IMG/VR virus record: IMGVR_UViG_3300009011_000001
Span: 184,575-248,574 of that record
Reading direction: 5' to 3' (one strand)
Length of the DNA: 64,000 nt
Of this stretch, positions 1,131 through 62,654 are shown in pieces; the first letter of the stretch is position 1, and the number at the start of each line of letters is the position of its first letter. Made by a program: the position numbers and the translations under genes. Under the pieces are notes generated by a model that did no database searches, was not told the DNA's origin, and was given only the letters and a program-made list of their open reading frames with translations.

Positions 1131-1144
1131 GTCCTTTGGAGGAC
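1131..1144 (+). promoter_or_regulatory. SD-sequestering hairpin GTCCT-TTGG-AGGAC
   Basis: One of 7 copies; ATG at 1151. Confidence 0.75.
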
Positions 1145-1150
1145 TTAGTA

Positions 1151-1489
1151 ATGCAAAAAGCAGATCTCTTGCTCGTCGTGGTTTATGTTGGCTTTATTCT
1201 CTATCGCCAGCATCGTCAGTTCAGCACCCTGCTGTCGCAATCGGTGGGCGGTTGGGCAGGACTCAAGTTCGCCGCTTCAATGCTTTCGGCGTTGTTCTAC
1301 ACGAGCATGGCTAACAACTCGCACTACAGGAACGGGTTCTTAGCATCGTTTATCACCACGCCGATTGTGCTCTACTCCATCGGGTTCCATTACACCCTTG
1401 GGGCTAACCTCTTTTTCGCTGCTGAGTCGACGGCGTTTTTCGTAGCCGGCTGGCATCTTGTCCGCAAACACCAGATGAACACTTTCTGA
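1151..1489 (+). CDS. Small multi-pass membrane protein
   Basis: GGAGG SD, start MQKADL, about 4 hydrophobic segments. Confidence 0.75.
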   Translation: MQKADLLLVVVYVGFILYRQHRQFSTLLSQSVGGWAGLKFAASMLSALFYTSMANNSHYRNGFLASFITTPIVLYSIGFHYTLGANLFFAAESTAFFVAGWHLVRKHQMNTF

Positions 1490-1499
1490 GGATTTCACT

Positions 1500-1862
1500 A
1501 TGTTAGTTTTCGTTCGTAATCCGTGGGTCCAAGGCATTGCCACCGCATCGGGCATTGCCGCAACGTTGGCTGTGGCTAGCTACTTCATTCTGAAGAGCGA
1601 GAAGAAAATTGCATCTGAGCCATCGCCGGTTTCTGAAGCAGACCGCAAGCAACGCGCTGAACTCGAGGGGAACATCAAACATCTCCTCCACCTCATGTCT
1701 AAGCAACGTGAGAAGCGTCCGATGTTCCTCACCAGTGAGCAGGCTCTCAGGGTCCGCTACCTGACCAACAAGATTTCGTATAGCTACGTCAACATACCGA
1801 TGCTGGAAGAAATCCAGATCGAAATCAAAAACATTTACGACAGTGCTGAAAAACGCACTTAA
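1500..1862 (+). CDS. Hypothetical protein, N-terminal membrane anchor plus helical domain
   Basis: GAGG SD, hydrophobic N-terminus, operon spacing. Confidence 0.75.
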   Translation: MLVFVRNPWVQGIATASGIAATLAVASYFILKSEKKIASEPSPVSEADRKQRAELEGNIKHLLHLMSKQREKRPMFLTSEQALRVRYLTNKISYSYVNIPMLEEIQIEIKNIYDSAEKRT

Positions 1863-1872
1863 AGGAATTGCC

Positions 1873-2205
1873 ATGTCAGTAGAAGCTGCTATCCGCATTG
1901 CGTGTGGTACTGTCTGCGTTGCCGCAGGTCTGTACGGTACTTACAAGTTCTGCAAGTTCTTCAACAGCGTTTCACGCAAACTCCAGATTGTTCAACGGAT
2001 CCAGACCAACGTTGAACAGCTGCACGTCGGCGACGCTGCTCTTGAAGGAGACCAGCTTCGTCAATTCATGATGGAGTTGGAATCGGTAAAGGATGTCCTG
2101 GAGCAGATCCAATTGGACTTCAGTTCCATTACCGAGAACGATCTTCTCAATGCCCTGAACACGTCCACCAAAATGTTCGTAACCTACGGTATCGCTAAGG
2201 AGTGA
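1873..2205 (+). CDS. Hypothetical protein, N-terminal membrane anchor plus helical domain
   Basis: AAGGA SD before MSVEAA; architecture like the upstream gene. Confidence 0.75.
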   Translation: MSVEAAIRIACGTVCVAAGLYGTYKFCKFFNSVSRKLQIVQRIQTNVEQLHVGDAALEGDQLRQFMMELESVKDVLEQIQLDFSSITENDLLNALNTSTKMFVTYGIAKE

Positions 2206-2609
2206 GCATGAGCAGTGTTAATGCAAGCGATCTTGAACAGCTGGCTATCATCGAAGCATTGATTGATAGCCAGGCTTCCCGTAACCAACCCAGCGGTGGA
2301 AACATCACCGCTGCTCGCTTTACTTGGGCCGGCGTCTTCGTAAATCCCTCGAAGAAAGAGTACGCGTTCAAGATCTACACGAAACCTGAAGACGATCCAC
2401 GTCCTGGGTGGTTGTACACGATCAACGAACACCGTCTCTCTGACGGCAAGGTCTTATCGACCGAAGTATCTGTAGGTGGTCTGTTGCCCTTGGTTAAGGA
2501 CAACGAGGTCATCGACATGATAAAAGCATTCAACGTAGACAGAAAAGGGTCGGTGTTGGTATCCGACCTTTGGGATCTGGAAACCGGTAAACACTACCCG
2601 ATGGTTTAG
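2202..2609 (+). CDS. Hypothetical protein
   Basis: Overlaps upstream stop, AAGGAG SD, followed by a hairpin. Confidence 0.75.
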   Translation: MSMSSVNASDLEQLAIIEALIDSQASRNQPSGGNITAARFTWAGVFVNPSKKEYAFKIYTKPEDDPRPGWLYTINEHRLSDGKVLSTEVSVGGLLPLVKDNEVIDMIKAFNVDRKGSVLVSDLWDLETGKHYPMV

Positions 2610-6647: not shown

Positions 6648-7193
6648 TCATGCTGGATCGAAACCAAGAGCATCGGTAACCGGAGCCACCGTTGCAAATG
6701 GAATTGGGGCATTGATGATGACCTGAGTCCCGTTCACGTAATAGAACGAGGTAGGTTTGATCTTCAATGTAATCTGCCCACCCGGCGCAGCTATGGTACT
6801 GTTGATGACATCTCGTTGCTCAAGAGCCAAACCGAACTTCGTGTTGATCGCCGACAAGGCTGAGAACACATCCGCATAATTCCCCGAAAGAGTCATGTCC
6901 TTCCCTTGGAACGGAACGGCAATATCTACTCGGTTATAGCGGAAGGTATACGTTCCCTTATAGCCCTTGCCGGCAACCGCGGTCATGAGCACAGTAGTGT
7001 TGAACAGCGTATCGCCAGAACTAACGGTGAGACCGCTGAACGTCACTTGGTTGGCCTGAATCGAAGTCCCTTGCTCTTTGTTAACTGCAGCAAGAATACC
7101 GACTGACCCAGCAACCGAGAACGGCGGCAGGTTGCTCAGGCCGTACATGGCCCACACATCCGCAGAACGGATTACAAACTTTGGGTTCGCCAT
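6648..7193 (-). CDS. Virion fibre-family structural protein (single-domain type)
   Basis: GYKGTYTFRYNRVDI; C-terminal FATVAPVTDALGFDPA. Confidence 0.8.
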   Translation of the reverse strand: MANPKFVIRSADVWAMYGLSNLPPFSVAGSVGILAAVNKEQGTSIQANQVTFSGLTVSSGDTLFNTTVLMTAVAGKGYKGTYTFRYNRVDIAVPFQGKDMTLSGNYADVFSALSAINTKFGLALEQRDVINSTIAAPGGQITLKIKPTSFYYVNGTQVIINAPIPFATVAPVTDALGFDPA

Positions 7194-7196
7194 GAC

Positions 7197-8291
7197 TTAC
7201 ACCTTAGGTTTGAGTTTGACGGTCAGACCAGCCAAGTTCGGCTGATACCACGGATTTCCAGCTGGCGTTTTAGGCGCAGAGAAGATCCGATCGTAGAACG
7301 TCTGAGCCGCCACCATAGGCGTAGTGGCGTCTGGCGTTTCTACACCACCTACAGTCAACGAGACGCCAAGGTTCCCTGTCGTTGCAGCAGTAACAGCCGA
7401 TCGACCTTTAACGTGCACACCGTTGATGACAGCGTTCTGAGGAATGGCAGATGCGTTATAGGTAATCGACGCAGGAGTCATTGCATCATCAGTAGTCAGC
7501 GTGGGTGTTGCGATACCTGTCGATGGGTTGCTGTAACCCGTCTTCAGTACGGACGTAGCATCACCAGCACTTGCAGTCCAGGTAGGAGCAGACACAGCAG
7601 ACACAGGCACCTTTTCAACAATCTGCGGTCCAAGGAACTGAGCCAGTTCACCACTCTCCCATTCGACGCAAAAGAAGTCACGCCAGAAGAATGTGTGGGT
7701 TTGGCCTTGCGTAATGTTGTACTGAGCATTGTGCCCAATGCCAACGCATACGCTCGTACCGCCAGGGCTTGCCGATACCGCAGTCGCCATCCAAGCCGGC
7801 ATAATGAGGTCGCTGAGTGGCTTACCGTCCACACGACGCTTAACCGTGTTGGTTGCAAAGTTGAGGTTGAACTCAACGTAGTACGGTTTATCGAACACAA
7901 AGCCCGGAATGTCTGCCTTGGTTACGATGTCGAACATGTTGGTGATTTCAATGACCGACGTCAAATGCACAAGACCGTTACCGGTGTAGGTCGAGCTCGG
8001 TTTTACCCTCACGCCAAACCAAAGGTTCGATGTAGGACCAACCGATGGCACCATCTCCTTAATGTCTGCAGACATCCGAAAACGGTAGTTACCGTAGTTG
8101 TATTGACCAGCACTAACGTCCATCCTCACCCACTTATCCGTGAAGATACTGACGGCCAAGTTGATTTCAGTGTTGACAATATACGTTTGCCACGGGCCGT
8201 TTGGGAACCGGGTTTGAAGAGGTGCAAGCGCACCAGCACCAGATGCGTTCGTGGTCGGGAGGTCCAAACCGTACATCGCATGAACTTTCAT
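7197..8291 (-). CDS. Putative fibre-tip/adhesin, beta-rich lectin-like protein
   Basis: Paralog of 8991 and 9971: YVEF...VDG, WRDF, LGPQ, P-x-G-x-x-W. Confidence 0.7.
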   Translation of the reverse strand: MKVHAMYGLDLPTTNASGAGALAPLQTRFPNGPWQTYIVNTEINLAVSIFTDKWVRMDVSAGQYNYGNYRFRMSADIKEMVPSVGPTSNLWFGVRVKPSSTYTGNGLVHLTSVIEITNMFDIVTKADIPGFVFDKPYYVEFNLNFATNTVKRRVDGKPLSDLIMPAWMATAVSASPGGTSVCVGIGHNAQYNITQGQTHTFFWRDFFCVEWESGELAQFLGPQIVEKVPVSAVSAPTWTASAGDATSVLKTGYSNPSTGIATPTLTTDDAMTPASITYNASAIPQNAVINGVHVKGRSAVTAATTGNLGVSLTVGGVETPDATTPMVAAQTFYDRIFSAPKTPAGNPWYQPNLAGLTVKLKPKV

Positions 8292-8302
8292 GGTTTGGCT
8301 CC

Positions 8303-8980
8303 TTACGACCAGAGGATCGTATCAGTTTTGAACTGCGATGCAAGCGTAGGTGTGAAGCCTACTTGACAAGTATCGCCTGGCGTGAAGAAGTAGCTAGTAC
8401 TAGCAGCCGTGATCGTCACCTCAGGTGATCCCGCCGCGATGGGTTCGTCGATAATATCTGCTGTGGTGAGGGTCATCCCGGTAGCTGCGTTGATCGCCGG
8501 AATCAGCGCTTGGGTCGTCGCAGCATTTCCGATCACCACACCTGCCAGACTACCCATGCGGGCAAGACCCGTACGGTTGTAGTAGAAGTACATCGACCCC
8601 GACAACTGAGCAGCGGGCAATGCAGTCAGCAGCGCCCGTGAGTTGTAAATCTGATTAGGGTCGTTATACGCCTCTACTGCACCTAACGAGAAATGGGTGG
8701 CAGGCCGAACGGTCTTACTAACGGCCAGGATCATGTTCATCAGACCGGTCTTGCCATCCACGCCTTTTGGCAGCGCGACGTTATACGCCATCGCATAGCC
8801 GTTGAACGTTTTCATTGCCAAACTGTTAGGCGGCACGCCCATCACGTAGCCTTGAAACCTTCTCAAAGCAAGTTGTGCCGGCGGGGTAGTCAGTGCGTAG
8901 CCGTGAATCTCGGCTACGTTGACCGGTGTTGCCAAGCGGGTCAGGGCATATCCCTGAATACTTGCGGCATTAATTGGCAT
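8303..8980 (-). CDS. Virion fibre-family structural protein with N-terminal GY repeats
   Basis: Four IQGYAL/IHGYAL/FQGYVM/FNGYAM repeats, then the YYNRTGL domain. Confidence 0.75.
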   Translation of the reverse strand: MPINAASIQGYALTRLATPVNVAEIHGYALTTPPAQLALRRFQGYVMGVPPNSLAMKTFNGYAMAYNVALPKGVDGKTGLMNMILAVSKTVRPATHFSLGAVEAYNDPNQIYNSRALLTALPAAQLSGSMYFYYNRTGLARMGSLAGVVIGNAATTQALIPAINAATGMTLTTADIIDEPIAAGSPEVTITAASTSYFFTPGDTCQVGFTPTLASQFKTDTILWS

Positions 8981-8990
8981 GGACTACTCC

Positions 8991-9953
8991 TCAAACATCA
9001 GGCGTCAGGATCAGATCCGTGCCGTCGATGTTAGAACTATTCCAATAAGCCCCACCAGGTGCTCTATGGAACACACCCAGGCCCAGGTTATAGCTGTAGT
9101 TGGTGATTGGACAAACCGGCGTCAGACCTGCAAGTTCAGTGCCGGCCAGAGAAAGCTTAGCCGCAGCCTTTGCCGTAGCCGCACCTGTTGAACGAGCACC
9201 CATTACAAGTTCGATCGCATTCACGATAACGCCACCCGGCAAGTTAGCCTTGAGGCTAGCAGCAACTGGAGCGTTTGTGGCCGATGTAGCAATGTTGGCT
9301 GTTGGGATAGCGCCCGGCTCGCTCAGTGCGTTGAGCAGTGTGGAACTTCCCGGAGTGGTGGTCCAATCCAAAGCCGATGCGGAATCCAGAGTGATCGGGT
9401 AAGCGACCTGAGGACCCAATGGGCCGATTGGCAAACCTTGCGCAGCACCCTGGTCGTCGCAGATGTAAATGTCGCGCCAGTCGTAGCGGCCATTGAGACT
9501 ACCCTTGACTTCAAGCCCCAACAGCATGCTGCGGGTGGATGGTGCGCTGGTATTGGCCTGCTTAACCCCATTCACCCAGCGTTCAACCACACCAGACGCG
9601 ATGTCGTAAGAGAACTCCAGATACGACGTCGTGCCGGTAACGCCTATCAGCGAATCGAGCATGACGTACGTGCCGCCGAAGTAGATGATGCCCGCACCAC
9701 CGCGGGCGTTCAGAGTGGATCGGCAGCGGATACCGATCCAGATCTTACTTACCGGAGATACCAAGTACGGATCAAGCGGAATGCTTGTCCGCTCAGCCCC
9801 CGATGCGGTTGCGTTACTGACCAGCCATCCATTGACGATCGTGTTTTGTGCCGACAAGTCAGCGCCGCGAGTCATACCGTGGCTGGCGTAATTGATCCAG
9901 CTCGTGTCGTTCTGCGGCAGGTGGTCGAAACCAATGATTGCTCTAACTGCCAT
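8991..9953 (-). CDS. Putative fibre-tip/adhesin, lectin-like protein
   Basis: Start MAVRAIIGFD after GAGGAG; YLEFSYD...WVNG, WRDIYICDD, PLGPQ. Confidence 0.7.
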   Translation of the reverse strand: MAVRAIIGFDHLPQNDTSWINYASHGMTRGADLSAQNTIVNGWLVSNATASGAERTSIPLDPYLVSPVSKIWIGIRCRSTLNARGGAGIIYFGGTYVMLDSLIGVTGTTSYLEFSYDIASGVVERWVNGVKQANTSAPSTRSMLLGLEVKGSLNGRYDWRDIYICDDQGAAQGLPIGPLGPQVAYPITLDSASALDWTTTPGSSTLLNALSEPGAIPTANIATSATNAPVAASLKANLPGGVIVNAIELVMGARSTGAATAKAAAKLSLAGTELAGLTPVCPITNYSYNLGLGVFHRAPGGAYWNSSNIDGTDLILTPDV

Positions 9954-9970
9954 GATGATAACTCCTCGTA

Positions 9971-11014
9971 TCAGGAAATAGTGTCTGGAGTCAATTTGAC
10001 CGCAGCGGTGTCTACCTTCACCGTATCCCACGCCGTACCGTCTGGGGCTTTGGGGTAGAGTCCAACCAGAGCCGATGTCAGAGTCGTAGGCAGGACCGGA
10101 TACTTGATCGGAGACGAGGAGCCGTTCAGCCCAACTTCGATCTTACTGGTAGTCGGGCCAACACCAACGCTATTGCCAACCATGTTGATTTGCACGCCAT
10201 TGATCTTGGTGCCGGATGGTGCGGTGGTGCGCAGACTCATGTCCAGTGGCAATTTGCTACCTGGAGAGTTGGCTGTCGTTGTTGCTGGAGGAAGTGCGAG
10301 CAGAGCGTCCAGCAAAGTGCCGGTTCCCGTACTCGTCGTCCATTCGACCCCGACAGCGGAATCGAGATACACAGGGTACATCTTCTGATCGCCCAGTGGA
10401 GCGACCATCCCGTCACCTGCTACGTCATCCAAGACGTAGATGTCGCGCACCGCGTAGCGACCACCTGGAGAGCTGGCCAGACGAATACCAATACAGCCAT
10501 TGCCAGCCGCCCATTGCGCCTTGATGGCCGCCGACATCGCTGGCGGGGTGTACGAAGAGAGCGAAGTGCCGTTAACCTTGGTGGCCACGGTGCCTGCAAC
10601 AAAGTCGTAGGTCATTTCGACGTAATACTCAGTACCAACGCCGCTAAGCCATGGCGCACCACCACTGCCTGCCAAGAACAGATAGCAGCTAAGGTCGTTC
10701 GGCGTGACGTTGGAGTTGAGGTGTACGATCGAGTGGGCGTTGGCATACACTGCCAGCGTCTTGATCCGCATGCCGATAGTCAGCTTGTTCGGATTGACAG
10801 GCACGTAACCGTTCATGCTGAAAGGTACGATCTGGTCCGACAAGTTGGTCATCGCGCTGATCCAACCATCTTGGTCGACGCAGACACGGCTGATGTTGGT
10901 GCCTACAGACAGACCTGGGTGGCCAAACGTAGTCCACCAGTCCGAGAACGTCGCGCCGACGGCTGGGTTGGTAGTCTTCAGCGCATTGTCAGTTCCGATA
11001 ATTGCACGAAGCAT
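9971..11014 (-). CDS. Putative fibre-tip/adhesin, lectin-like protein
   Basis: Start MLRAIIGTD after GAGGAG; YYVEMTYD...VNG, VRDIYVLDD, PLGDQ. Confidence 0.7.
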   Translation of the reverse strand: MLRAIIGTDNALKTTNPAVGATFSDWWTTFGHPGLSVGTNISRVCVDQDGWISAMTNLSDQIVPFSMNGYVPVNPNKLTIGMRIKTLAVYANAHSIVHLNSNVTPNDLSCYLFLAGSGGAPWLSGVGTEYYVEMTYDFVAGTVATKVNGTSLSSYTPPAMSAAIKAQWAAGNGCIGIRLASSPGGRYAVRDIYVLDDVAGDGMVAPLGDQKMYPVYLDSAVGVEWTTSTGTGTLLDALLALPPATTTANSPGSKLPLDMSLRTTAPSGTKINGVQINMVGNSVGVGPTTSKIEVGLNGSSSPIKYPVLPTTLTSALVGLYPKAPDGTAWDTVKVDTAAVKLTPDTIS

Positions 11015-11018
11015 GAGA

Positions 11019-11399
11019 TCACTCCTCAGCCGCAGGTGGTGTTTCTTCAACCGGATCTTCTTCTACTGCTGGATCATTCCAGCAGAGATAGATAGTTCCC
11101 ACTGGAGCCACAGAACGCTCCGGGAAGCGCAACCCGAGGGCGTACTTGTAATGACTGAACGTAGGCAGGTTCGGATGGTTAAGTTCGTTGTAGACGACCT
11201 CAGCGCCATTCAGGCTATATTCCACGTCCTGTTCGTTCAGGTTCCACTTGGCTTTGTCATCTTGCGGACCACACTCAGCCAAGATCTGTGCAATCAAACG
11301 CTGATCGGGTTCGTTCAACACACCAACCGGAACGTCGTGCATCAACTCGCCCAGTTCGGTAAAGTCGGCACGGATCAAATAGTTCGGCCAATCTTGCAT
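11019..11399 (-). CDS. Stand-alone C-terminal domain of the fibre family
   Basis: Aligns to the C-half of the 12884 product (DFT...GVLN...LPT.S.YKY.L.LR...G..YL..NDP); GAGG SD. Confidence 0.75.
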   Translation of the reverse strand: MQDWPNYLIRADFTELGELMHDVPVGVLNEPDQRLIAQILAECGPQDDKAKWNLNEQDVEYSLNGAEVVYNELNHPNLPTFSHYKYALGLRFPERSVAPVGTIYLCWNDPAVEEDPVEETPPAAEE

Positions 11400-11414
11400 A
11401 TTCAAATCCTCGAC

Positions 11415-11909
11415 TTAGAAGCCCAACAACTTGTCAGTGTTAAAGGCCGTTGTGATGTCTGGGTAACCGCCAAACTTCAAGGTTGCCGTTCCTGTCCAGC
11501 CAAGGCTGTTGGAAGTGGCTTCCAGAATGACGTTTACTTTGCCAGATACGGTGGCCGACGCATGCTCAACCAAATGAGCACTCGTGAACGGTACGTTGAT
11601 GTACCCAACCACGACAGGCAACCACGTAGCCAACGGAACACCGTCTGCGCAGATACAGCCAATCAGGTTGAAGTTCTCGAGCGGCTTAAGGTCAAGTCGG
11701 TCGTAAAAGAACGTCGTGAAACCAGAGACCAACGTCGTGGTATCGGAAGCCCGAACAGGAATAGCGGTGTTCTTCCCGTACTTGGTGATCTCGGCTGAAG
11801 TAGCAGGTCGTGGTGTACCGAAGACCAGATCGGAAGCGGTGAATGTAACGCCGCTTGCAGCATTGATCATCGCCACCAGGTCCGCCACGCTTGTTACGAA
11901 AATGCTCAT
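11415..11909 (-). CDS. Virion fibre-family structural protein (single-domain type)
   Basis: FYDRLDL, SLGWTG, C-terminal TAFNTDKLLGF. Confidence 0.8.
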   Translation of the reverse strand: MSIFVTSVADLVAMINAASGVTFTASDLVFGTPRPATSAEITKYGKNTAIPVRASDTTTLVSGFTTFFYDRLDLKPLENFNLIGCICADGVPLATWLPVVVGYINVPFTSAHLVEHASATVSGKVNVILEATSNSLGWTGTATLKFGGYPDITTAFNTDKLLGF

Positions 11910-11917
11910 GGCGACAC

Positions 11918-12826
11918 CTACACTTTGTATTGGAGGATAACCTTACCTGCGAACCAGCTGTTTGCCGCTGCCTGAATAACGACGGCAGTGTTGTACTTGG
12001 CAACGTTGGCTTCGGGTAAGGCAGCGGCCGGCAATGAGTAGCGGTACCAGGTGATGTTTACACAACCACCGGGCGTTGCAGCATCAGCGATCTGCCAGTT
12101 GTTATACGCGGTATTGACGTTCAGCCAATCAAGAATTTGCTGAAGTCCACTGTTCGCTCCGACGGTTGGGTTCCACACCGGCGGGATCGTCTGCAAGATT
12201 GCCGAAATAGCAGAGGCATCTTGAGCGTAGACGATGAACTCACCTTGAGGTTTGCGGCCCGGGGTTGTGAAATCATTACCACCCGGATAAAGACGCCCAG
12301 CCAGCGCACGGTTCGAGTCGGTGATCAACATGTTGAAAGGTCGAGGTCCGACAGTCCACGTCAACTGAACCGATCCCTTGTAGCACTGGCTAGTGGTCAC
12401 GACACTAACGGTCGTAGCCACACCCGACGAGAGCGCTGCCGTGTTTGCAATGTCGGAGGCAGGAATCTTGATACCGAATTTCTGAGCGAACGATGCCTTC
12501 CAAGTCGCCACTGGCAACTGGGTGGTGGCAAAGTAATCGTTCAGCGTTAACTTCATGTTGCGGTAGATCGTGCCGAGATCGATACGACGATACTTGACGG
12601 TCTGTTGACCGAGAACGGAACTACCGGGGGCAGCAGAGATCAGGATCGATGTGTCGTTCTTGTACGGATCGCCCGGCTGAACAGAGATCACCGCAGGGGC
12701 ACCGAATTGAACAGTCCCTTTTGGATAAACCGTTTTGAATCCAGGGTTGCTTGCTTCGATCAGATCGTAAAGAATGTCAATCTGATCGGCTTTGTAATCA
12801 GTTGCTGGCGTACCAGGATCAGCCAT
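11918..12826 (-). CDS. Virion fibre-family structural protein (two-domain type)
   Basis: YRRIDL, YPGGNDF, ends VILQYKV. Confidence 0.8.
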   Translation of the reverse strand: MADPGTPATDYKADQIDILYDLIEASNPGFKTVYPKGTVQFGAPAVISVQPGDPYKNDTSILISAAPGSSVLGQQTVKYRRIDLGTIYRNMKLTLNDYFATTQLPVATWKASFAQKFGIKIPASDIANTAALSSGVATTVSVVTTSQCYKGSVQLTWTVGPRPFNMLITDSNRALAGRLYPGGNDFTTPGRKPQGEFIVYAQDASAISAILQTIPPVWNPTVGANSGLQQILDWLNVNTAYNNWQIADAATPGGCVNITWYRYSLPAAALPEANVAKYNTAVVIQAAANSWFAGKVILQYKV

Positions 12827-12883
12827 GATTAATCTCCGAATGGATAAGTAGACGAGCACCTCGCGGTGCTCGTCTATGCCCAC

Positions 12884-13759
12884 TTACGCGTTCGCGTCGA
12901 ACGGATCGTTGTAGTGGAGGTACGACAGACCAGCAGGAGTCAGAACCGTTGGATCCAGGCGCAGAGCCAACACGTACTTGTACGCGGAGTTCGTTGGCAA
13001 GGATGCCGAGTTCAGGCCGTTGCTTACGACGGTGGCGCCAGCCACGTTCCAGGCGGTAGTGCCTGGAGTGTTTACCCACAGCGCTTTGCCGTTGCCGGTA
13101 TCGACTGCCAGCAACATGTCGCGGATCGCATTCGCTTGGGTGGTGTTGAGAACACCCGGAGCAAGTGCGGACAGCGTGTTGAAGTAGCTGGTGAAGTCGT
13201 ACGGGTACAGATACATCAGAGCAAACGTATCGGTATCGTTGGCGGTTGGGTAGTTCAGACCATTCAGGTTGGTCACGGTCACCAACTGATCCAGCGGAGC
13301 AGCGCCCTTAGTGATCGTCAGAGTTGCTTGGCCGATCCAACCCAGGCTGCCAGTTTTGGCCTGCAGAATAGCAGTCTGAGTATTGTCACCGTTATCGGTG
13401 AGAGCATTGTCTTCCAGATCGTCGGTAGTGAACTGAATGCCAGTCCAGTAGGCCAACATCGGCAACAGGCTGTGCACGGACGTGATGTTGTACGCCGCGC
13501 ACTTGAAGCCCGGAAGGTTGGCCGCAGTCAAAGAAGCCAGGTTCAGACGGTCGTACGCGATCGGTCGACTACCCTGATACGCTCCGCCGGCTTTTGCAGT
13601 GATGCGCAAACCGGTGTTGAGAGTAGTCAGCTGACCTTGCCACGTTCCAGTGAGCACCTGAGGAGCACCGTAAGTGAAGTCGTTCGGCGTGAACGCCGTC
13701 GAGTTGGCCGCATTGAGAGCCAGCAACACATCGATGAGGGATTGATTCATGTACGACAT
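12884..13759 (-). CDS. Virion fibre-family structural protein (two-domain type)
   Basis: YDRLNL, SLGWIG, LNGLNYP, YLHYND. Confidence 0.8.
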   Translation of the reverse strand: MSYMNQSLIDVLLALNAANSTAFTPNDFTYGAPQVLTGTWQGQLTTLNTGLRITAKAGGAYQGSRPIAYDRLNLASLTAANLPGFKCAAYNITSVHSLLPMLAYWTGIQFTTDDLEDNALTDNGDNTQTAILQAKTGSLGWIGQATLTITKGAAPLDQLVTVTNLNGLNYPTANDTDTFALMYLYPYDFTSYFNTLSALAPGVLNTTQANAIRDMLLAVDTGNGKALWVNTPGTTAWNVAGATVVSNGLNSASLPTNSAYKYVLALRLDPTVLTPAGLSYLHYNDPFDANA

Positions 13760-13770
13760 CGATTCTATCC

Positions 13771-14721
13771 TCAGACGTTGTAGTGGATGTAGTGTTGACC
13801 AGCACCGCAACCTTTAGCGGTATCCGCATCAGGAATGGTCAGGATCAGCACGCGGTTGTAGTACTTGGAGTTAGCCAGCGGTGCAGAATCGATACCGGCT
13901 TGAGTACTCAAGTCTACTACGCGGCCAGCCCACGACTGGTAGGCGTACGCCGGTGCAGCGTTGGTTGGATAAACCAGGCCTTTACCGTATAGACGGTTGA
14001 GTTCGTCGATGAAGCGGTTGCCGAAGCCGACCACTGCGTCGCCGATACCTTCCCAGCCGTTCGGGTAGCTGTTCCACTTGACGCCGGAGTTGATGAATGC
14101 AGTCCAGTCGATACCGAACGCCATGTTGCTGACGACAACCGGGTGCGATGGGTTGCTGAAGTCGTTGCCACCAGGGAAACGACGAGCGGTCAGGTTGGTC
14201 ACGGTGATCATGGATTCCAGATCCTGAGGAGCCGACTTCCATTTCAATGCAAACGAACCGACGTAGCCGAGACTGGTAGCTTTTGCGTTCACGGTCACGG
14301 TGGTGGTGTAGAACCCACCTTCCTGAGTGTTGCCGCGCAGGATGTTGACATCCGCTACGTCGTCGGTGGTCAGGTTCAGACCGTGCTTGGCGTTGATCAG
14401 CGGCAGCAGGTTGTAAACGGTAAACACAATCGAGTTGCTTGCGCTTTGGTTTGCCGAGTACTTGTTCATCTGTACCAGCACACCGCGGAGCAACTTACTC
14501 AGATCGATACGGCGATAGTTCATCGGCTTACGGCCGATATAGTCGCCACCGACAGAGATAACCGCGATGGTGGTGTTGAGATCGGATCGGCCAGGGATCG
14601 TAGCCGTTACCGGATTGTCCAGCTTTGCATTCGCTGGTGTCAGCGCAACTGGAAGATCCGGGTTAGCGGCATTAATGAGGTCGTAGACCAGTTCTGGCGA
14701 TGGCTTGTTGTATAAAGGCAT
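13771..14721 (-). CDS. Virion fibre-family structural protein (two-domain type)
   Basis: YRRIDL, SLGYVG, FPGGNDF, YIHYNV. Confidence 0.8.
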   Translation of the reverse strand: MPLYNKPSPELVYDLINAANPDLPVALTPANAKLDNPVTATIPGRSDLNTTIAVISVGGDYIGRKPMNYRRIDLSKLLRGVLVQMNKYSANQSASNSIVFTVYNLLPLINAKHGLNLTTDDVADVNILRGNTQEGGFYTTTVTVNAKATSLGYVGSFALKWKSAPQDLESMITVTNLTARRFPGGNDFSNPSHPVVVSNMAFGIDWTAFINSGVKWNSYPNGWEGIGDAVVGFGNRFIDELNRLYGKGLVYPTNAAPAYAYQSWAGRVVDLSTQAGIDSAPLANSKYYNRVLILTIPDADTAKGCGAGQHYIHYNV

Positions 14722-14726
14722 CTTGG

Positions 14727-15521
14727 TTAAACCTCGTCAAGCAAGTTGTAATGGAAATACAAAGGGCCGAGGATCGATGAACTGACAACAGCCTGCTGAA
14801 CCACGACACGGTCGAAGTCCTTGTTGCAGTCGTCAATTGCAGAAGTCGGGTAGTCCACAATCGAACCTTGGAACCACGAAGGGATTCCCATGTACAGGCA
14901 GGCAGATTGCAAAGTGGTCCAGTCGGTATACGTCGCCGTGGCCGGATCAACCTTCAGTGCATCGCGCAGGCTCGTGAAGTCGATTCCCCACGTCAGCATC
15001 CTGCCAGATTTCTTGGCCAGAGCTGGATCGTCCGGATGCTTGAACAAATCAAGAAGGCGGATGTGGATGATCGATTCCAAAAGAGTCCGGCCGTACATCA
15101 ACTCGATTTCAACCGAGCCAATGAAGCCAAAACTTTCAGGCCGAGAAACGAGAGTCAGTGTCTTCGTCTCGTTCAGTTCCAGAGTGGGCGGCGTGAACGG
15201 TTCCAGATCTTCAGGAGTGATGAACAGACCCAACTGGCGGTTCACCATCTCGATCACCATTTCTGATGTAAACGGGACGGTGTTTCGCAGTTGAAGATCT
15301 TCCAGCGCTTCCGTCAGACTGATCCGTTTGTAGAGCAGGGTTTGCTGCCCAACATAAACGCGGCCAGGAACAGCCTCGATCGTGATAGCCGAGTTGAACT
15401 TCTCGTTCCCTTCGAGGACCACCGGTGCTTGAGGAGTGATGTTGATCAGCGAGAGCGGACGCTTGGGAACGTTCTTCTCGTTGGCTTCATTAAGAAGCCT
15501 TGTGATGCTGTTATCCATCAT
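14727..15521 (-). CDS. Virion fibre-family structural protein (two-domain type)
   Basis: YKRISL, TWGIDFT, YFHYN. Confidence 0.8.
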   Translation of the reverse strand: MMDNSITRLLNEANEKNVPKRPLSLINITPQAPVVLEGNEKFNSAITIEAVPGRVYVGQQTLLYKRISLTEALEDLQLRNTVPFTSEMVIEMVNRQLGLFITPEDLEPFTPPTLELNETKTLTLVSRPESFGFIGSVEIELMYGRTLLESIIHIRLLDLFKHPDDPALAKKSGRMLTWGIDFTSLRDALKVDPATATYTDWTTLQSACLYMGIPSWFQGSIVDYPTSAIDDCNKDFDRVVVQQAVVSSSILGPLYFHYNLLDEV

Positions 15522-15529
15522 GTCTCTCC

Positions 15530-16360
15530 TTAATCAACCGGAGGCAGGTTGTAATGGAGGACCAACGAACCGCTGAGACCAACTGAGTTCGTTTCGTCCA
15601 GAGCGACGATCACGACAAACGCGTATTCTGGATTGACGTCATCACGCCCTTCGGTAGTGCCGGAGTATGTGATGTTAGCGCCCAGCAGACTGTAACGCTG
15701 AGCAGCAGTCGTTGACCACGAATCGCCAGTAATCGTTGCCAATACTTGACGAACGATTTCCAGATGCGCCGTGCCGGCAGCAACGCCAGACAGATCAGAC
15801 GACACTGGGCTGAAGTCACGCCAGTACGAATACGCTGCGGCGTACGGTTTGTCGATACGACCTGTCGGATAGTTCAACCCATTGAGGTTGGTTACCGTCA
15901 GGAAGTCCCCCAGAGGCCGCGCACCTTGCGTTACCGTGAAATCGATAGTGCCGATCCAGTTACGGCTCGTCGCCTTCGCAGTGAGGGTCACAGTGCCGTT
16001 GCCGTCCACTGTACCTGCTGGACCATCGACGAAATCGTCAGTGGTGAAGTTCAGGCCGTGTAACTGGTTCAGACGGTTGGCCACATCCATGATCGTTTCA
16101 AGGTTGTAGCCCTTGATGGAAGTGGAAATCAGAGTAGCGAGATCCGCAAGATCCAAACGTTTGTACTTGATCGGCACAGTGCCGTCGTAAGTACTTTGAA
16201 TGTCCTTTGCGGTGATGGTCATGCTGGTGTTTTCACCAGACGGTCCCGTGGGGATGACCACCGGATTACCGAACACGTATTCGGCTTCAACCAAATCTAC
16301 GTTATTCTGAGTCTTAATTGCCTCGAGAATTGCCTCGAGTGGCAGCTGATACAAAGCCAT
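15530..16360 (-). CDS. Virion fibre-family structural protein (two-domain type)
   Basis: YKRLDL, SRNWIG, LNGLNYP, LHYN. Confidence 0.8.
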   Translation of the reverse strand: MALYQLPLEAILEAIKTQNNVDLVEAEYVFGNPVVIPTGPSGENTSMTITAKDIQSTYDGTVPIKYKRLDLADLATLISTSIKGYNLETIMDVANRLNQLHGLNFTTDDFVDGPAGTVDGNGTVTLTAKATSRNWIGTIDFTVTQGARPLGDFLTVTNLNGLNYPTGRIDKPYAAAYSYWRDFSPVSSDLSGVAAGTAHLEIVRQVLATITGDSWSTTAAQRYSLLGANITYSGTTEGRDDVNPEYAFVVIVALDETNSVGLSGSLVLHYNLPPVD

Positions 16361-16371
16361 AAACGAAGCCT

Positions 16372-17178: not shown

Positions 17179-17215
17179 GAAGTATCTCCTGGGTGAGCCA
17201 CTTACCGACATAGGT

Positions 17216-17257
17216 GTGCAGATGAGGATGAGGCAAAAACCCCATCCTCATCTGCAC
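17216..17257. terminator. 15-bp stem hairpin (terminator or processing site)
   Basis: gtgcagatgaggatg...catcctcatctgcac. Confidence 0.55.
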
Positions 17258-17274
17258 GGGGTATCGCTGCAGCC

Positions 17275-17820
17275 TTAAACGAGAGGAGGAGCGGCGTAAG
17301 TCAGGCCGTCCATTTCGACGTCAGGGATCGCGACAGCCAGATCGATGTCTTCGGCTTTCACGGTGATCGTGATGGAGCCAGTGAAGATCAGCGAGTCAGC
17401 TTTGACGACGATTTGAACGTCATGCTCTTCGTTCAGGGTGCCGGTGAACTCAGGCAGGTCGGCGTCGACGAAGTCGTCGGTAGTCAGGTTGACTTTCAGA
17501 CGGCTGTTGAATTCAGGGATCAGGTCGGCGATCTTGGTGGAGTCGCCAATGCTGAAGACCAGGTCGCGATCGCCGCCGGAGGCAATGAATGCCGCACCGA
17601 CGTCGGTGCCCAGGTGTGGACGAACGTAGCGAATAACGCGATCGTTCTTATAGCCCGAACCAGGAGCAGCGGTCAGAGTGAGGCTGGTGTTTTTGCCAGT
17701 TGCTTCAACAACAGGAAGACCCGCCCAGGTGAAAGAAGCCTCGGTGAAGCCTTTGCCAGTCTTGGCATTGACCATATCGAGAATAATCTGCTTGGGCGCT
17801 TTGGTTAAATCGTTGGCCAT
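17275..17820 (-). CDS. Virion fibre-family structural protein (single-domain type; probably abundant)
   Basis: YVRPHL, SLIFTG, C-terminal AIPDVEMDGLTY; strongly biased codons; flanked by hairpins. Confidence 0.8.
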   Translation of the reverse strand: MANDLTKAPKQIILDMVNAKTGKGFTEASFTWAGLPVVEATGKNTSLTLTAAPGSGYKNDRVIRYVRPHLGTDVGAAFIASGGDRDLVFSIGDSTKIADLIPEFNSRLKVNLTTDDFVDADLPEFTGTLNEEHDVQIVVKADSLIFTGSITITVKAEDIDLAVAIPDVEMDGLTYAAPPLV

Positions 17821-19020: not shown

Positions 19021-19041
19021 AACTTTCTTTCAGTCACACAT
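19021..19041 (+). promoter_or_regulatory. Putative early promoter, 21-bp exact repeat of 62595-62615
   Basis: AACTTTCTTTCAGTCACACAT heads a + strand operon of small genes. Confidence 0.65.
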
Positions 19042-19063: not shown

Positions 19064-19077
19064 GTCCTTAGGAGGAC
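19064..19077 (+). promoter_or_regulatory. SD-sequestering hairpin GTCCT-TAGG-AGGAC
   Basis: Directly before ATG 19081. Confidence 0.75.
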
Positions 19078-19829: not shown

Positions 19830-19843
19830 GTCCTTAGGAGGAC
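19830..19843 (+). promoter_or_regulatory. SD-sequestering hairpin GTCCT-TAGG-AGGAC
   Basis: Before ATG 19850. Confidence 0.75.
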
Positions 19844-20244: not shown

Positions 20245-20258
20245 GTCCTTTGGAGGAC
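20245..20258 (+). promoter_or_regulatory. SD-sequestering hairpin GTCCT-TTGG-AGGAC
   Basis: Before ATG 20261. Confidence 0.75.
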
Positions 20259-21812: not shown

Positions 21813-21826
21813 GTCCTTTGGAGGAC
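21813..21826 (+). promoter_or_regulatory. SD-sequestering hairpin GTCCT-TTGG-AGGAC
   Basis: Before ATG 21832. Confidence 0.75.
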
Positions 21827-22723: not shown

Positions 22724-22775
22724 CGCTCTGAGCCGGGGGTTCGCCCCCGGTGTTATGCCGCAAACTTATTTTTAG

Positions 22776-22789
22776 GTCCTTAGGAGGAC
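22776..22789 (+). promoter_or_regulatory. SD-sequestering hairpin GTCCT-TAGG-AGGAC
   Basis: Before ATG 22793. Confidence 0.75.
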
Positions 22790-23158: not shown

Positions 23159-23182
23159 CTATTCCAAGGGGAATGTAGAAAT

Positions 23183-61547: not shown

Positions 61548-62023
61548 TGGACAACAGAAAGCTGGTTGTGATTCCTCGATGGCAGCCTCATTTCAACCGA
61601 ATGATAGAAATCATGAATGAGCACCTCGATTTGCCAGAAGGTGAGCGGCTGTACTTAGCGCAGGTTCAAGTGTTCGGCAATTCGATTGTCCCGTTTGTCT
61701 TTAAGATGGAAGACTGGCAACTCACAGCCGGTCCGGTCGAGGGCTACCGGTACACCAATCTGGCCAAAGGGATTGATGAGGGTTTCGACTGTCTCGATCC
61801 TGTATTGGCCAACGATTTCTTCGACGGTCCTGTAACGATCTTCGATTACACCCCCACTGACCTGGAGCGGGAAATCGTCGAGAACAATCTCGTCAAGAAT
61901 ACCGTGCCGAACAATGCCTACAAGCCGGGACCTGAGCTTCATCGCATTGGCTCGACTCCATTAGGCGGGACTGACTATTCCAGCTCTTTCAAGAATAAAG
62001 GACCATGGGGACTTTCGTCATGA
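61547..62023 (+). CDS. Hypothetical protein
   Basis: TAATG coupling, GGAG SD. Confidence 0.75.
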   Translation: MDNRKLVVIPRWQPHFNRMIEIMNEHLDLPEGERLYLAQVQVFGNSIVPFVFKMEDWQLTAGPVEGYRYTNLAKGIDEGFDCLDPVLANDFFDGPVTIFDYTPTDLEREIVENNLVKNTVPNNAYKPGPELHRIGSTPLGGTDYSSSFKNKGPWGLSS

Positions 62024-62193
62024 ATCCAGGCAACCTGTTGTGGTTTAGCATGCTGCTGGTCACATTGAGCATGGTTGCCGGATACGCTTATGCTCGTAAC
62101 TATCGACCTGAGCTTTTTACGGCTGCGGTTGTTCTGGCAAACATGGTGGTGGTCATCGGCCTTGGTATTTATTACTGGAAGAGTGCAGTGTAA
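62020..62193 (+). CDS. Small two-TM membrane protein
   Basis: MNPGNLLWF..., ATGA coupling. Confidence 0.65.
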   Translation: MNPGNLLWFSMLLVTLSMVAGYAYARNYRPELFTAAVVLANMVVVIGLGIYYWKSAV

Positions 62194-62366
62194 TGCACCT
62201 GGCCTATGTCTGGATCATCGCGCTCGGTCTGGCTTGCACATTCGTGGCAGGATGGCAGGCAGGCAAGTGGGGAATGAAACCTGGTGGTGTTCTAGCGTCT
62301 ATTGGAGTGATCCTTGCCATTGGTATAGCGGTCATTACGTGGAAGCTAGGAGTAGGTCATGTCTAA
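62193..62366 (+). CDS. Small two-TM membrane protein, 57 aa (not in ORF track)
   Basis: MHLAYVWIIALGLACTFVAGWQAGKWGMKPGGVLASIGVILAIGIAVITWKLGVGHV*; TAATG coupling. Confidence 0.65.
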   Translation: MHLAYVWIIALGLACTFVAGWQAGKWGMKPGGVLASIGVILAIGIAVITWKLGVGHV

Positions 62367-62595
62367 TGGAGAATATGAATTCCCCGAGGAGGACTTCTTC
62401 GGGGTAGTCGAAGTTTCGACATTTCGCCATGGGAAGATGTACGTCAAGACTGAAGGTCAAAGTGTTGGCGTAAACATCCCTGATGACGAGCTTTGGGATA
62501 AACGTTTTAAGCGTGGCGATACATTGGAAGTTTACGTCGCACCTGATAACTTTACGCATTACCGGAAGTACGTCCCGCAACAATCCGACGAATAA
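62359..62595 (+). CDS. Small beta-rich hypothetical protein
   Basis: AGGAG SD; OB-like KRGDTLEVYV. Confidence 0.7.
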   Translation: MSNGEYEFPEEDFFGVVEVSTFRHGKMYVKTEGQSVGVNIPDDELWDKRFKRGDTLEVYVAPDNFTHYRKYVPQQSDE

Positions 62596-62615
62596 ACTTT
62601 CTTTCAGTCACACAT
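62595..62615 (+). promoter_or_regulatory. Putative early promoter, 21-bp exact repeat of 19021-19041
   Basis: AACTTTCTTTCAGTCACACAT. Confidence 0.65.
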
Positions 62616-62640
62616 TGCTTAAGTGAGTACATCATTTAAA

Positions 62641-62654
62641 GTCCTCCGGAGGAC
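62641..62654 (+). promoter_or_regulatory. SD-sequestering hairpin GTCCT-CCGG-AGGAC
   Basis: Before ATG 62660. Confidence 0.75.

What the first reader, a model, noticed from the sequence alone, without database searches (positions are those of the whole stretch)
1131..62654. Seven copies of GTCCT-NNGG-AGGAC lock the Shine-Dalgarno of non-structural genes
Seen at 1131, 19064, 19830, 20245, 21813, 22776 and 62641, always ending 2-6 nt before an ATG. Loops are TTGG, TAGG or CCGG and the stem is invariant. A sequence-changed analogue ATTCC-AAGG-GGAAT (23161-23174) precedes 23183. I saw none before structural genes. Three copies sit 22-25 nt after the CAGT(C/A)A(C/T)ACAT promoter motif. Inference: a regulon mark, such as a binding site for a translational regulator (GGA-in-loop if read as GTCC/GGAC, RsmA-like), a RegB-like GGAG cleavage site, an mRNA export tag, or a palindromic DNA operator.
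Basis: partly seen in the sequence, partly recalled or inferred. Interest (0 to 1): 0.75.

Follow-up and report, generated by a model that had tools for sequence, protein, structure and literature searches.

The report
Hairpin-wrapped ribosome-binding site of phage cassettes
A 13-14-base RNA hairpin that wraps the ribosome-binding site is the repeated, evolutionarily maintained leader of small early genes in an uncultured phiKZ-like giant phage, and it also marks the points where these genes are swapped between related phages.

Summary
GTCCT-NN-GGAGGAC occurs 7 times in the window (0 expected by chance), always on the + strand and 2-6 nt before an ATG. The whole 248.6-kb phage genome holds 13 such sites.

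Each site is a 5-bp hairpin with an NNGG loop. The Shine-Dalgarno GGAGG spans the loop and the 3' arm.

Relatives keep the hairpin in orthologous leaders and change it by compensatory substitutions: ATCCT/AGGAT, GTTCT/AGAAC, GCTCT/AGAGC, ATTCC/GGAAT, GACC/GGTC, plus strand-specific U.G pairs. Pairing on the sense strand is therefore under selection.

All 13 sites lie in operons driven by the AGTCACACAT promoter-like motif, upstream of small non-paralogous ORFans.

"Lock" overstates it. The stem is worth only about -4.6 kcal/mol at 37 C, and the SD region is predicted to be no more paired than in other genes.

Homology blocks between relatives begin or end exactly at the element, so it also acts as a cassette junction, as T4 PeSLs do.

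The same architecture occurs in phages that lack a phiKZ-type capsid, which argues against a phage-nucleus-specific export tag.

No CsrA or RegB homologue is encoded in the genome. Whether the hairpin acts purely in cis or is read by a trans-acting factor remains unresolved.

The parts
1131..1144 (+). SD hairpin GTCCT-TTGG-AGGAC, 6 nt before the ATG at 1151. First gene after a promoter motif.
19064..19077 (+). SD hairpin GTCCT-TAGG-AGGAC, 3 nt before the ATG at 19081. First gene after a promoter motif. Homology blocks to relatives start or end here.
19830..19843 (+). SD hairpin GTCCT-TAGG-AGGAC, 6 nt before the ATG at 19850. Internal to the operon.
20245..20258 (+). SD hairpin GTCCT-TTGG-AGGAC, 2 nt before the ATG at 20261. 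Homology blocks to L009 and L022 begin at its first base.
21813..21826 (+). SD hairpin GTCCT-TTGG-AGGAC, 5 nt before the ATG at 21832 (family C, AP2-like protein). The homology block to L023 begins at its first base.
22776..22789 (+). SD hairpin GTCCT-TAGG-AGGAC, 3 nt before the ATG at 22793. It follows a terminator-like hairpin.
23161..23174 (+). Co-varied family member ATTCC-AAGG-GGAAT, 8 nt before the ATG at 23183. Orthologous leaders read ATTCC-TTGG-GGAAT in L023 and GTTCT-AAGG-AGAAC in L010.
62641..62654 (+). SD hairpin GTCCT-CCGG-AGGAC, 5 nt before the ATG at 62660. First gene after a promoter motif.
1095..1105 (+). Promoter-like motif CAGTAATACAT with a T/A-rich upstream part. It ends 25 nt before the hairpin.
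19031..19041 (+). Promoter-like motif CAGTCACACAT. It ends 22 nt before the hairpin.
62605..62615 (+). Promoter-like motif CAGTCACACAT. It ends 25 nt before the hairpin.
22733..22750 (+). GC-rich terminator-like hairpin followed by TTATGCC. It lies upstream of the hairpin at 22776 and forms part of a composite cassette boundary.
   Evidence: the phiKZ terminator-plus-TTAT motif is described in PMC10914365
19081..23158 (+). Array of small early-operon genes: 78, 168, 128, 161, 150, 119, 65, 180, 49, 66 and 121 aa. Five of them carry the hairpin. The order of the hairpin-led cassettes differs between close relatives.

Best explanation
The element is an RNA hairpin built into the ribosome-binding site. 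It has a 5-bp stem (4 bp plus a pentaloop in distant relatives) and a loop ending in GG, and the SD GGAGG runs from the loop into the 3' arm.

It is the standard leader module of small ORFan gene cassettes in the operons of one promoter class (probably early, virion-RNA-polymerase-type) of an uncultured phiKZ-like jumbo phage clade.

Most likely it acts in cis on the mRNA. In an otherwise G-poor, unstructured leader it is the only local fold. It half-masks a very strong SD while leaving the first G residues exposed, and the 30S subunit must melt about 4.6 kcal/mol (about 6.7 at 20 C) to bind. This would set and standardise initiation for whatever gene sits behind it, independent of context.

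As DNA, the repeated 14-mer is the crossover point at which cassettes are exchanged and reordered.

Shown: the motif, its position, its selection for pairing, its link to the promoter class, and the breakpoints. Inferred: the effect on translation, and that no trans-acting factor is required.
For: Non-random motif: 7 copies against 0 expected in the window; 13 in the genome, and 13 of 15 GGAGGAC SDs carry the 5' arm.

Downstream genes: not paralogous and without family hits, so the leader is maintained independently of the genes.

Folding: the hairpin is in the minimum-free-energy fold of 12 of 13 leaders.

Conservation: present in orthologous leaders of relatives with 94% down to 39% helicase identity.

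Geometry test made without selecting for pairing:
- 127-kb relative G001: 14 of 128 genes, against 0-3 for shifted-arm controls, with 7 different stems, all complementary.
- 4-bp class in eight more distant relatives: 18 hits, against 1 in 40 control tests. The stems were GTCC/GGAC 10, GACC/GGTC 6, ATCC/GGAT 2 and TCCC/GGGA 1.

Pair counts: 99.4% of cells are paired, and 4 of 5 pairs show changes on both sides.

Strand specificity: U.G pairs occur only on the sense strand. The 13- and 14-nt forms differ in loop length.

Leader composition: G fraction 0.11 against 0.26 genome-wide, and GGA is depleted nearby.

Cassette junction: the order of hairpin-led genes is M,-,N in the window, N,K,M in L009, K,N,M in L022 and Q,K in L023. 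BLAST blocks start at the first base of the element. Of 92 block endpoints, 11 fall in element windows, against 0.12 expected.

Generality: the same architecture occurs in phages lacking a phiKZ capsid gene, which points to a mechanism that uses the host translation apparatus.
Against: - The stem is weak. By the published MS2 coat-gene rule (my own knowledge: de Smit and van Duin), hairpins weaker than about -6 kcal/mol barely reduce translation, so a purely thermodynamic effect may be small at 37 C.
- Predicted SD pairing is no higher than in other genes, 0.56 against 0.53.
- The stem sequence GUCC/GGAC is far commoner than pairing alone requires, and this holds across deep divergence. That hints at sequence-specific reading or at homogenisation by recombination.
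- Restriction to one promoter class is what a trans-acting temporal regulator would also produce.
- No expression data exist for this uncultured phage.
- In this genome alone, non-canonical stems are no more frequent than chance. The covariation evidence comes from relatives.
Confidence: 0.45

Rival explanations
1. The hairpin is a binding site for a trans-acting RNA-binding protein that times or limits translation of this gene class. The protein could be the host's CsrA/RsmA (GGA presented by a short hairpin over the SD). It could also be a phage protein, such as the AP2/PUR-like family C protein or a ChmC-type factor. A many-hairpin early transcript might also act as a sponge for such a protein.
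For: - GGA sits at the loop/stem junction over the SD in every copy, and fully inside the pentaloop G[AT]GGA in distant relatives.
- The stem sequence is biased to GUCC/GGAC beyond what pairing requires.
- Restriction to one promoter class.
- Occurrence in unrelated phages fits a shared host factor.
- ChmC of PhiPA3 binds near start codons with no motif found (PMC11077065).
- A conserved, hairpin-led early gene has an AP2-like nucleic-acid-binding fold.
Against: - No CsrA homologue in the phage.
- CsrA targets normally carry two or more GGA sites 10-63 nt apart (my own knowledge). Here extra GGA motifs are depleted, 8 against 17.7 expected.
- The first loop positions vary freely, even between orthologues.
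- The stems co-vary, so base identity is not strictly read.
- Family C is absent from the sequenced pieces of three relatives that do have the hairpin.
- The host is unknown.
Confidence: 0.3
2. It is a cleavage signal for a RegB-like endoribonuclease that shuts off early mRNAs by cutting within GGAG of the SD.
For: GGAG lies at the loop/stem junction of leaders belonging to one, probably early, gene class. T4 RegB cuts GGAG in early SDs (my own knowledge).
Against: - No RegB family (PF10715) match in the genome, even at E<=1.
- GGAG occurs in 113 of 298 leaders, most without the hairpin.
- Some co-varied members have GGGG or GGAGA cores.
Confidence: 0.07
3. It is a palindromic DNA operator for a dimeric DNA-binding protein that controls these operons.
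For: GTCC-N5-6-GGAC is a DNA palindrome. Compensatory changes also preserve palindromy. Five copies lie 22-25 bp downstream of the promoter motif. An AP2-like DNA-binding protein is encoded in the cluster.
Against: - Half-site spacing varies by 1 bp, even within one genome (13- and 14-nt forms).
- U.G pairs keep pairing on the sense strand only.
- Eight of 13 copies are 429-3744 bp from any promoter motif but always 2-6 nt from a start codon.
- The centre is always xxGG, as an SD requires.
Confidence: 0.05
4. It is an export or address tag for mRNAs leaving the early infection vesicle or the phage nucleus.
For: The phage has a phiKZ-type capsid and a phage RNA polymerase subunit. In such phages transcription and translation are separated and no export signal is known (PMC12908238).
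Against: - The same hairpin-SD architecture is abundant in a complete 97-kb phage genome and in other contigs with no phiKZ capsid gene.
- Within this genome most genes, including all identified virion genes, lack it although their mRNAs must also be exported.
- Chimallin itself was not looked for in this genome.
Confidence: 0.03
5. The repeat is maintained only as a recombination or gene-conversion sequence at cassette borders, and the RNA fold has no function.
For: Breakpoints coincide with the element. The sequence is homogeneous within each genome.
Against: Microhomology does not require self-complementarity. Yet seven or more different stems all remain complementary, with sense-strand U.G pairs. 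Position relative to the start codon is fixed.
Confidence: 0.05

Closest known systems
PeSLs (promoter-early stem-loop cassettes) of T4-type phages (PMC2839356, PMC4122927)
   Same: - Short repeated intergenic regulatory cassettes that lie upstream of ORFans in plastic early regions and end in an SD and a start codon.
- They serve as crossover points for modular shuffling. Here, homology breakpoints fall on the element.
- Five copies here are fused to a promoter-plus-leader unit that is itself repeated.
   Different: - The PeSL stem-loop is a GC-rich terminator placed around a sigma-70 promoter. Here the stem-loop is the ribosome-binding site itself, has no U tract, and is only 5 bp long.
- The promoter motif here is not sigma-70-like.
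- Eight of 13 copies have no promoter motif nearby.
- Mini-circle formation was not examined.
SD-sequestering leader hairpins that control translation in cis (T4 lysozyme e and soc early transcripts; the MS2 coat-gene hairpin series; my own knowledge)
   Same: The SD is part of a stem, so the ribosome must open the stem. The element sits 2-8 nt from the start codon.
   Different: - Those are single-gene devices with stronger stems. In T4 they are bypassed by a second promoter inside the hairpin.
- This one is a weak, repeated, regulon-wide module (13 copies in the genome) that is kept through compensatory change across a whole phage clade.
CsrA/RsmA binding sites (GGA in the loop of a short hairpin overlapping the SD; my own knowledge)
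   Same: GGA is presented by a short hairpin over the SD. Stem sequence is variable, and C-G closes a six-base loop if the U-A pair is open.
   Different: - GGA is shifted one base to the 3' side, and its A is paired in the 5-bp form.
- There is a single site per leader, with GGA depleted nearby.
- No binding data exist and the host is unknown.
T4 RegB target sites (GGAG in early-gene SDs; my own knowledge)
   Same: An SD variant that marks one temporal class of phage genes.
   Different: No RegB homologue is present. The hairpin arm has no counterpart in RegB sites. GGAG is not restricted to this gene class.
RNA thermometers of the fourU/ROSE type (my own knowledge)
   Same: A short hairpin pairs the SD, and its stability changes strongly between 20 and 37 C (-6.7 against -4.6 kcal/mol).
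   Different: - No U-rich anti-SD and no internal mismatches.
- The copies sit in a lytic phage and mostly within operons.
- No link to temperature-regulated functions.

Membership tests
cis-acting SD-sequestering leader hairpin | The SD lies within a stem immediately upstream of the start codon. | tested here: met
   AGG of GGAGG is in the 3' arm and GG is in the loop. The element lies 2-8 nt from the start. The hairpin is in the minimum-free-energy fold of 12 of 13 leaders.
cis-acting SD-sequestering leader hairpin | Pairing is maintained by selection (compensatory changes). | tested here: met
   Unbiased geometry tests gave 14 hits against 0-3 in controls, 18 against 1 in 40 and 16 against 1-4.
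cis-acting SD-sequestering leader hairpin | The stem is stable enough to limit initiation (about -6 kcal/mol or stronger in the MS2 series). | tested here: inconclusive
   -4.6 kcal/mol at 37 C and -6.7 at 20 C; variants range from -2.5 to -4.9. SD pairing probability is 0.56 against 0.53 in other genes.
cis-acting SD-sequestering leader hairpin | Stem mutations change translation. | not testable with these tools
   Requires reporter assays.
PeSL-type mobile regulatory cassette | A repeated intergenic motif upstream of ORFans in variable regions. | tested here: met
   13 copies lie before non-paralogous ORFans of 42-180 aa. Gene content is variable between relatives.
PeSL-type mobile regulatory cassette | Recombination breakpoints fall at the motif. 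| tested here: met
   Homology blocks start at the first base of the element. 11 of 92 endpoints fall in element windows, against 0.12 expected.
PeSL-type mobile regulatory cassette | Contains a sigma-70-type early promoter. | tested here: not met
   No excess of sigma-70-like sites (2 found, 3.8 expected). Only 5 of 13 copies follow the phage-specific AGTCACACAT motif closely.
PeSL-type mobile regulatory cassette | The stem-loop acts as a transcription terminator or attenuator. | tested here: not met
   5-bp stem, no U tract, located inside the RBS. Separate GC-rich terminator-like hairpins lie upstream of some copies.
CsrA/RsmA binding site | A GGA core exposed in a hairpin loop and overlapping the SD. 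| tested here: inconclusive
   In the 5-bp form, GG is in the loop and A is paired. In the pentaloop form of distant relatives, GGA is fully in the loop.
CsrA/RsmA binding site | Two or more GGA sites within bridging distance on one target. | tested here: not met
   8 extra GGA motifs within -60 to +40 of the 13 sites, against 17.7 expected.
CsrA/RsmA binding site | Bound by CsrA/RsmA. | not testable with these tools
   No phage CsrA (best match 12.6 bits, below the cut-off). The host is unknown.
RegB-type cleavage site | A RegB-family nuclease is encoded by the phage. | tested here: not met
   PF10715 gave no match at E<=1.
RegB-type cleavage site | Cleavage within GGAG during infection. | not testable with these tools
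   Requires 5'-end mapping.
palindromic DNA operator | Fixed half-site spacing and a fixed position relative to a promoter. | tested here: not met
   13- and 14-nt forms coexist. Eight of 13 copies are 429-3744 bp from the nearest promoter motif. U.G pairs are asymmetric in duplex DNA.
Rfam families | A match to any curated RNA family. | tested here: not met
   No match at gathering thresholds in the window.

The most novel reading that the evidence does not exclude
The hairpin-SD is a shared address label that is read by a trans-acting factor. This could be host CsrA/RsmA-type or a still unknown phage protein. Whole early transcripts carrying 5-14 such hairpins would then be switched on or off together, or would titrate the host regulator as CsrB/RsmZ sponge RNAs do. 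Unrelated phage lineages would have converged on the same label.
Probability: 0.25. Interest if true: 0.8.

Novelty: new variant of a known kind. Interest (0 to 1): 0.6.

Why it matters
Translational control in phiKZ-like jumbo phages is almost unexplored. Their mRNAs are made apart from ribosomes and fold before they are translated.

This element is a compact, sequence-defined RBS module with clear evolutionary support for its fold. It marks one promoter class, is portable between unrelated genes, and sits at the borders of shuffled ORFan cassettes. That gives three things:
- a ready handle for finding early-gene cassettes in uncultured jumbo phages;
- a directly testable case of regulon-wide control at the SD;
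- a second example, after T4 PeSLs, of a regulatory repeat that also organises gene exchange.

Its occurrence in unrelated phages suggests a general, so far undescribed design of phage ribosome-binding sites.

Tried and rejected
- Megablast and tblastn of the region and of the 625-aa protein against GenBank phages found nothing. The nearest cultured capsid protein is only 33.5% identical.
- The search for related loci with the 625-aa protein found nothing. The single metagenome scan returned only contigs already held, plus one 6.8-kb piece.
- The MAFFT alignment of all instances (A2) put the length gap outside the loop and was discarded for pair counting. The 14-nt and 13-nt classes were counted separately instead.
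- Those pair counts are partly circular, because the instances had been chosen with a pairing filter. The shifted-arm tests were therefore run.
- In this genome alone, non-canonical stems are at chance level.
- A translational-coupling explanation was rejected as a general account. Five copies follow promoters with no upstream gene, and two internal copies lie 22 and 52 nt beyond the previous stop codon.
- Rfam gave no match. CsrA and RegB families gave no match. The sigma-70 promoter and intrinsic-terminator scan was uninformative.
- GTCC/GGAC tetranucleotides are not unusual in the genome.
- Family C was examined as the trans factor. Fold searches were weak (E>=0.004) and there was no co-occurrence with the element in three relatives.
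- Paper searches for the motif strings and for SD hairpins in jumbo phages found no prior description.


Full report
**What the window is.** The 64-kb window is bases 184575-248574 of a 248,574-bp IMG/VR virus record with 123-bp direct terminal repeats and 52% G+C.
- Gene 27402-29684 is a phiKZ-type major capsid protein (Pfam PhiKZ_MCP, E 2.6e-125).
- 31005-32648 matches a phage 'polymerase' PHROG and 42350-45172 a virion structural protein.
- The nearest cultured capsid protein is only 33.5% identical (Pseudomonas phage pPa_SNUABM_DT01).
- It is therefore an uncultured, deep-branching phiKZ-like jumbo phage. I did not look for chimallin, so 'nucleus-forming' is an assumption.

**The observation.**
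- Each copy ends 2-6 nt before an ATG. The analogue ATTCC-AAGG-GGAAT sits 8 nt before the ATG at 23183.
- CAGTMAYACAT occurs three times, and each copy ends 22-25 nt before a hairpin.
- With my own gene calls (298 genes) the whole genome has 13 sites GTCCT-N1-2-GGAGGAC directly before starts. All are on the + strand, but 228 of the 298 genes are too, so the strand bias itself is weak evidence.
- There is also one antisense copy inside a gene with no ORF behind it.
- Of 15 leaders with a GGAGGAC-type SD, 13 carry the GTCCT arm.
- The 13 downstream proteins are 42-180 aa, not paralogous to each other, and have no Pfam or PHROG assignment apart from one PHROG of unknown function.
- A covariance model built from the family finds no further member in the window at E<0.01.

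**Link to a promoter class.** The core AGT[CA]A[CT]ACAT occurs 15 times in the genome, always on the + strand and in intergenic DNA.
- It is preceded by a T/A-rich stretch and often by TTATGCCGT...TTCGATTTAA.
- phiKZ early promoters are likewise a conserved box preceded by a T-rich segment, with 31-40-nt 5' UTRs (PMC8244752). Here the distance from the motif to the ATG is 34-47 nt.
- Every one of the 13 hairpins lies 32-3744 nt downstream of such a motif, with no opposite-strand gene in between. Five are the first gene after it.
- That these are early genes is inferred. No expression data exist.

**Is it a structure?** The 14-mer folds as a 5-bp stem with a 4-nt loop: -4.6 kcal/mol at 37 C and -6.7 at 20 C. 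It is part of the minimum-free-energy fold of 12 of 13 leaders.

Relatives were reached through the neighbouring divDNAB-type helicase (25121-26668, - strand). It has a gradient of homologues from 94% to 26% identity whose contigs I fetched.
- Close relatives (L009, L022, L023) keep GTCCT/AGGAC in the orthologous leaders.
- The 127-kb relative G001 diversifies the stem but always keeps it complementary: ATCCT/AGGAT, GTTCT/AGAAC, GCTCT/AGAGC, ATTCC/GGAAT, GACCT/GGGTC and GTCCT/GGGAC.
- One case is a G-C to A-U double change in a leader that is otherwise alignable base for base with L009.

My first instance list had been chosen with a pairing filter, so I ran a test that does not select on pairing. 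I anchored on a GG at the right distance from each called start and asked whether the 5 nt after it are complementary to the 5 nt placed 1-2 nt before it. I then repeated this with the 5' arm shifted.

| Genome or set | Hits | Shifted-arm controls |
|---|---|---|
| G000 (this genome) | 17 genes | 3-8 |
| G001 (127-kb relative) | 14 of 128 genes | 0-3 |
| Eight relatives, 39-61% helicase identity (4-bp stem / pentaloop form) | 18 | 1 in 40 tests |

- In G000, 13 of the 17 are canonical and the other 4 are at chance level.
- In the 4-bp class the form is GTCC-G[AT]GGA-GGAC. The stems were GTCC/GGAC x10, GACC/GGTC x6, ATCC/GGAT x2 and TCCC/GGGA x1.
- Two relatives at 34-35% identity had none.
- Formal pair counts give 99.4% paired cells and double changes at 4 of 5 pairs.
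- U.G pairs occur on the sense strand only, and loop length differs between copies in one genome. Both fit an RNA hairpin better than a duplex-DNA operator.

**How strong a 'lock'?** Not strong.
- The predicted probability that the SD window is paired is 0.56 for hairpin genes and 0.53 for all the others.
- The stem is weaker than the roughly -6 kcal/mol at which hairpins began to limit MS2 coat translation (my own knowledge).
- The SD is very strong (up to UAAGGAGG) and its first G residues are in the loop.
- The 30 nt upstream are G-poor (0.11 against 0.26), and extra GGA motifs are depleted, 8 against 17.7 expected. The hairpin is therefore the one defined fold in an otherwise open leader.
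- I read this as a module that standardises, rather than blocks, initiation. This is inference.

**Cassette junctions.**
- After the promoter at 19031 the hairpin-led genes are ordered M,-,N,B in the window, N,K,M,B in L009, K,N,M,B in L022 and Q,K,B in L023. Genes without the hairpin (G, O, I, D) keep their order.
- BLAST blocks between L009 and L022, and between L009 and the window, begin at the first base (+/-1) of the element. The promoter-leader block ends at the element's last base.
- Across four relatives, 11 of 92 block endpoints fall in element windows, against 0.12 expected. Five of these are at offset 0.
- Promoter plus leader is itself repeated (genome 172625 and 203606). A GC-rich hairpin followed by TTATGCC precedes the copy at 22776.
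- This resembles the phiKZ terminator-plus-TTAT motif (PMC10914365).
- The arrangement parallels T4-type PeSLs, which also end in an SD and mediate shuffling of ORFans (PMC2839356; PMC4122927). There, however, the stem-loop is a terminator and the promoter is sigma-70-like. Neither holds here.

**Wider distribution.** An IMG/VR scan for the exact 14-mer followed by an ATG hit more than 117 stretches.
- Multi-copy cases include another complete 231.7-kb phiKZ-capsid genome with 7 GTCCT/AGGAC and 3 GTTCT/AGAAC sites.
- They also include contigs without any phiKZ capsid gene.
- One of these is a complete 97-kb genome. In it, 11 genes clustered on one strand carry NNCCT-GAGG-AGGNN with six different complementary stems (16 hits against 1-4 in controls).
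- Another is a 9.8-kb contig in which 14 of 15 same-strand genes carry it.
- The architecture is therefore not tied to the phage nucleus. This weakens the export-tag idea and favours a mechanism that runs on host machinery.

**Trans factors.**
- No CsrA or RegB homologue is encoded, and Rfam has no match.
- One conserved hairpin-led gene (21832-22374) gives sub-threshold AP2-domain hits in 7 of 9 orthologues. It models as tandem beta-beta-beta-alpha units (pLDDT 74).
- Fold matches for that model are weak: AP2, PUR-alpha, and the AP2 domains of homing endonucleases. The gene is missing from the sequenced pieces of three hairpin-bearing relatives.
- It is a lead only. ChmC of PhiPA3 binds near start codons with no motif found (PMC11077065).
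- The strong preference for GUCC/GGAC over other complementary stems across deep divergence remains unexplained. It keeps a sequence-reading factor, or homogenisation by recombination, in play.

**Verdict.**
- The fold is well supported (about 0.9) and the regulon link is supported.
- The mechanism is open between a cis-acting RBS module (0.45) and a factor-binding site (0.3). Cleavage site, DNA operator, export tag and recombination-only readings are minor.
- I found no prior description in the searched literature.
- I rate it a new variant of known kinds: SD hairpins and PeSL-like cassettes.

Noticed in passing
whole genome (G000): TATG/CATA is the second most under-represented tetranucleotide (observed/expected 0.55). 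TATG is the late-promoter word of phiKZ (my own knowledge), so the avoidance may mark a promoter signal for the non-virion RNA polymerase.
   Followed up: no
window 27352-27401: The capsid-gene leader carries a conserved palindrome CAAAGCTTTG about 40 nt before the ATG. It also has a second hairpin (CCAAAT-AGCT-ATTTGG in more distant relatives, degenerate with G.U pairs here) whose 3' arm ends in the GG of the GGAG SD. A structural gene therefore also has an SD-touching hairpin, but of another sequence family.
   Followed up: partly
genome 175713-175760 (outside the window): The leader after another AGTCACACAT motif forms a 12-bp hairpin (-14 kcal/mol) that fully sequesters its GAGG SD. This is a real 'lock', unlike the 5-bp element.
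   Followed up: no
genome 1736-1749, - strand (outside the window): An exact copy of GTCCTTAGGAGGAC lies antisense inside a + strand gene, with only a 34-codon TTG frame behind it. About 0.03 such copies are expected by chance. It may be a relic.
   Followed up: partly
window 21832-22374: This conserved, hairpin-led 180-aa protein (family C) has a sub-threshold AP2 domain in 7 of 9 orthologues and a tandem beta-beta-beta-alpha model. The weak fold matches are to AP2 and PUR-like nucleic-acid binders.
   Followed up: yes
window 6648-18974, - strand: An array of about 13 paralogous genes of family DUF7941 (PF25613) lies next to the early cluster. The array is conserved in relatives, with variable copy number.
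   Followed up: no
window 2192-2205: TCGCT-AAGG-AGTGA, 2 nt before the ATG at 2208 and in the same operon as the hairpin at 1131, has the family geometry with one G.U pair. It is within chance expectation and below the covariance-model threshold.
   Followed up: partly
L118 1700-8230 (IMG/VR contig 3300043446_004424): Every intergenic region (about 95-115 nt) of this unrelated phage contig holds a long structured repeat and then GACCTGAGGAGGTC before the ATG. This is reminiscent of the RNase III processing sites between T7 early genes.
   Followed up: partly
genome 172625 and 203606 (window 19032): Promoter motif plus 19 nt of leader (AGTCACACAT followed by AACTCACATGAATCAAACC) is repeated identically at two loci. 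Promoter-leader units are therefore duplicated as blocks.
   Followed up: no
window 22733-22759 and 1063-1069: A GC-rich hairpin followed by TTATGCC resembles the conserved phiKZ terminator-plus-TTAT motif reported in PMC10914365. TTATGCCGT also sits just upstream of the promoter motif at 1095.
   Followed up: partly
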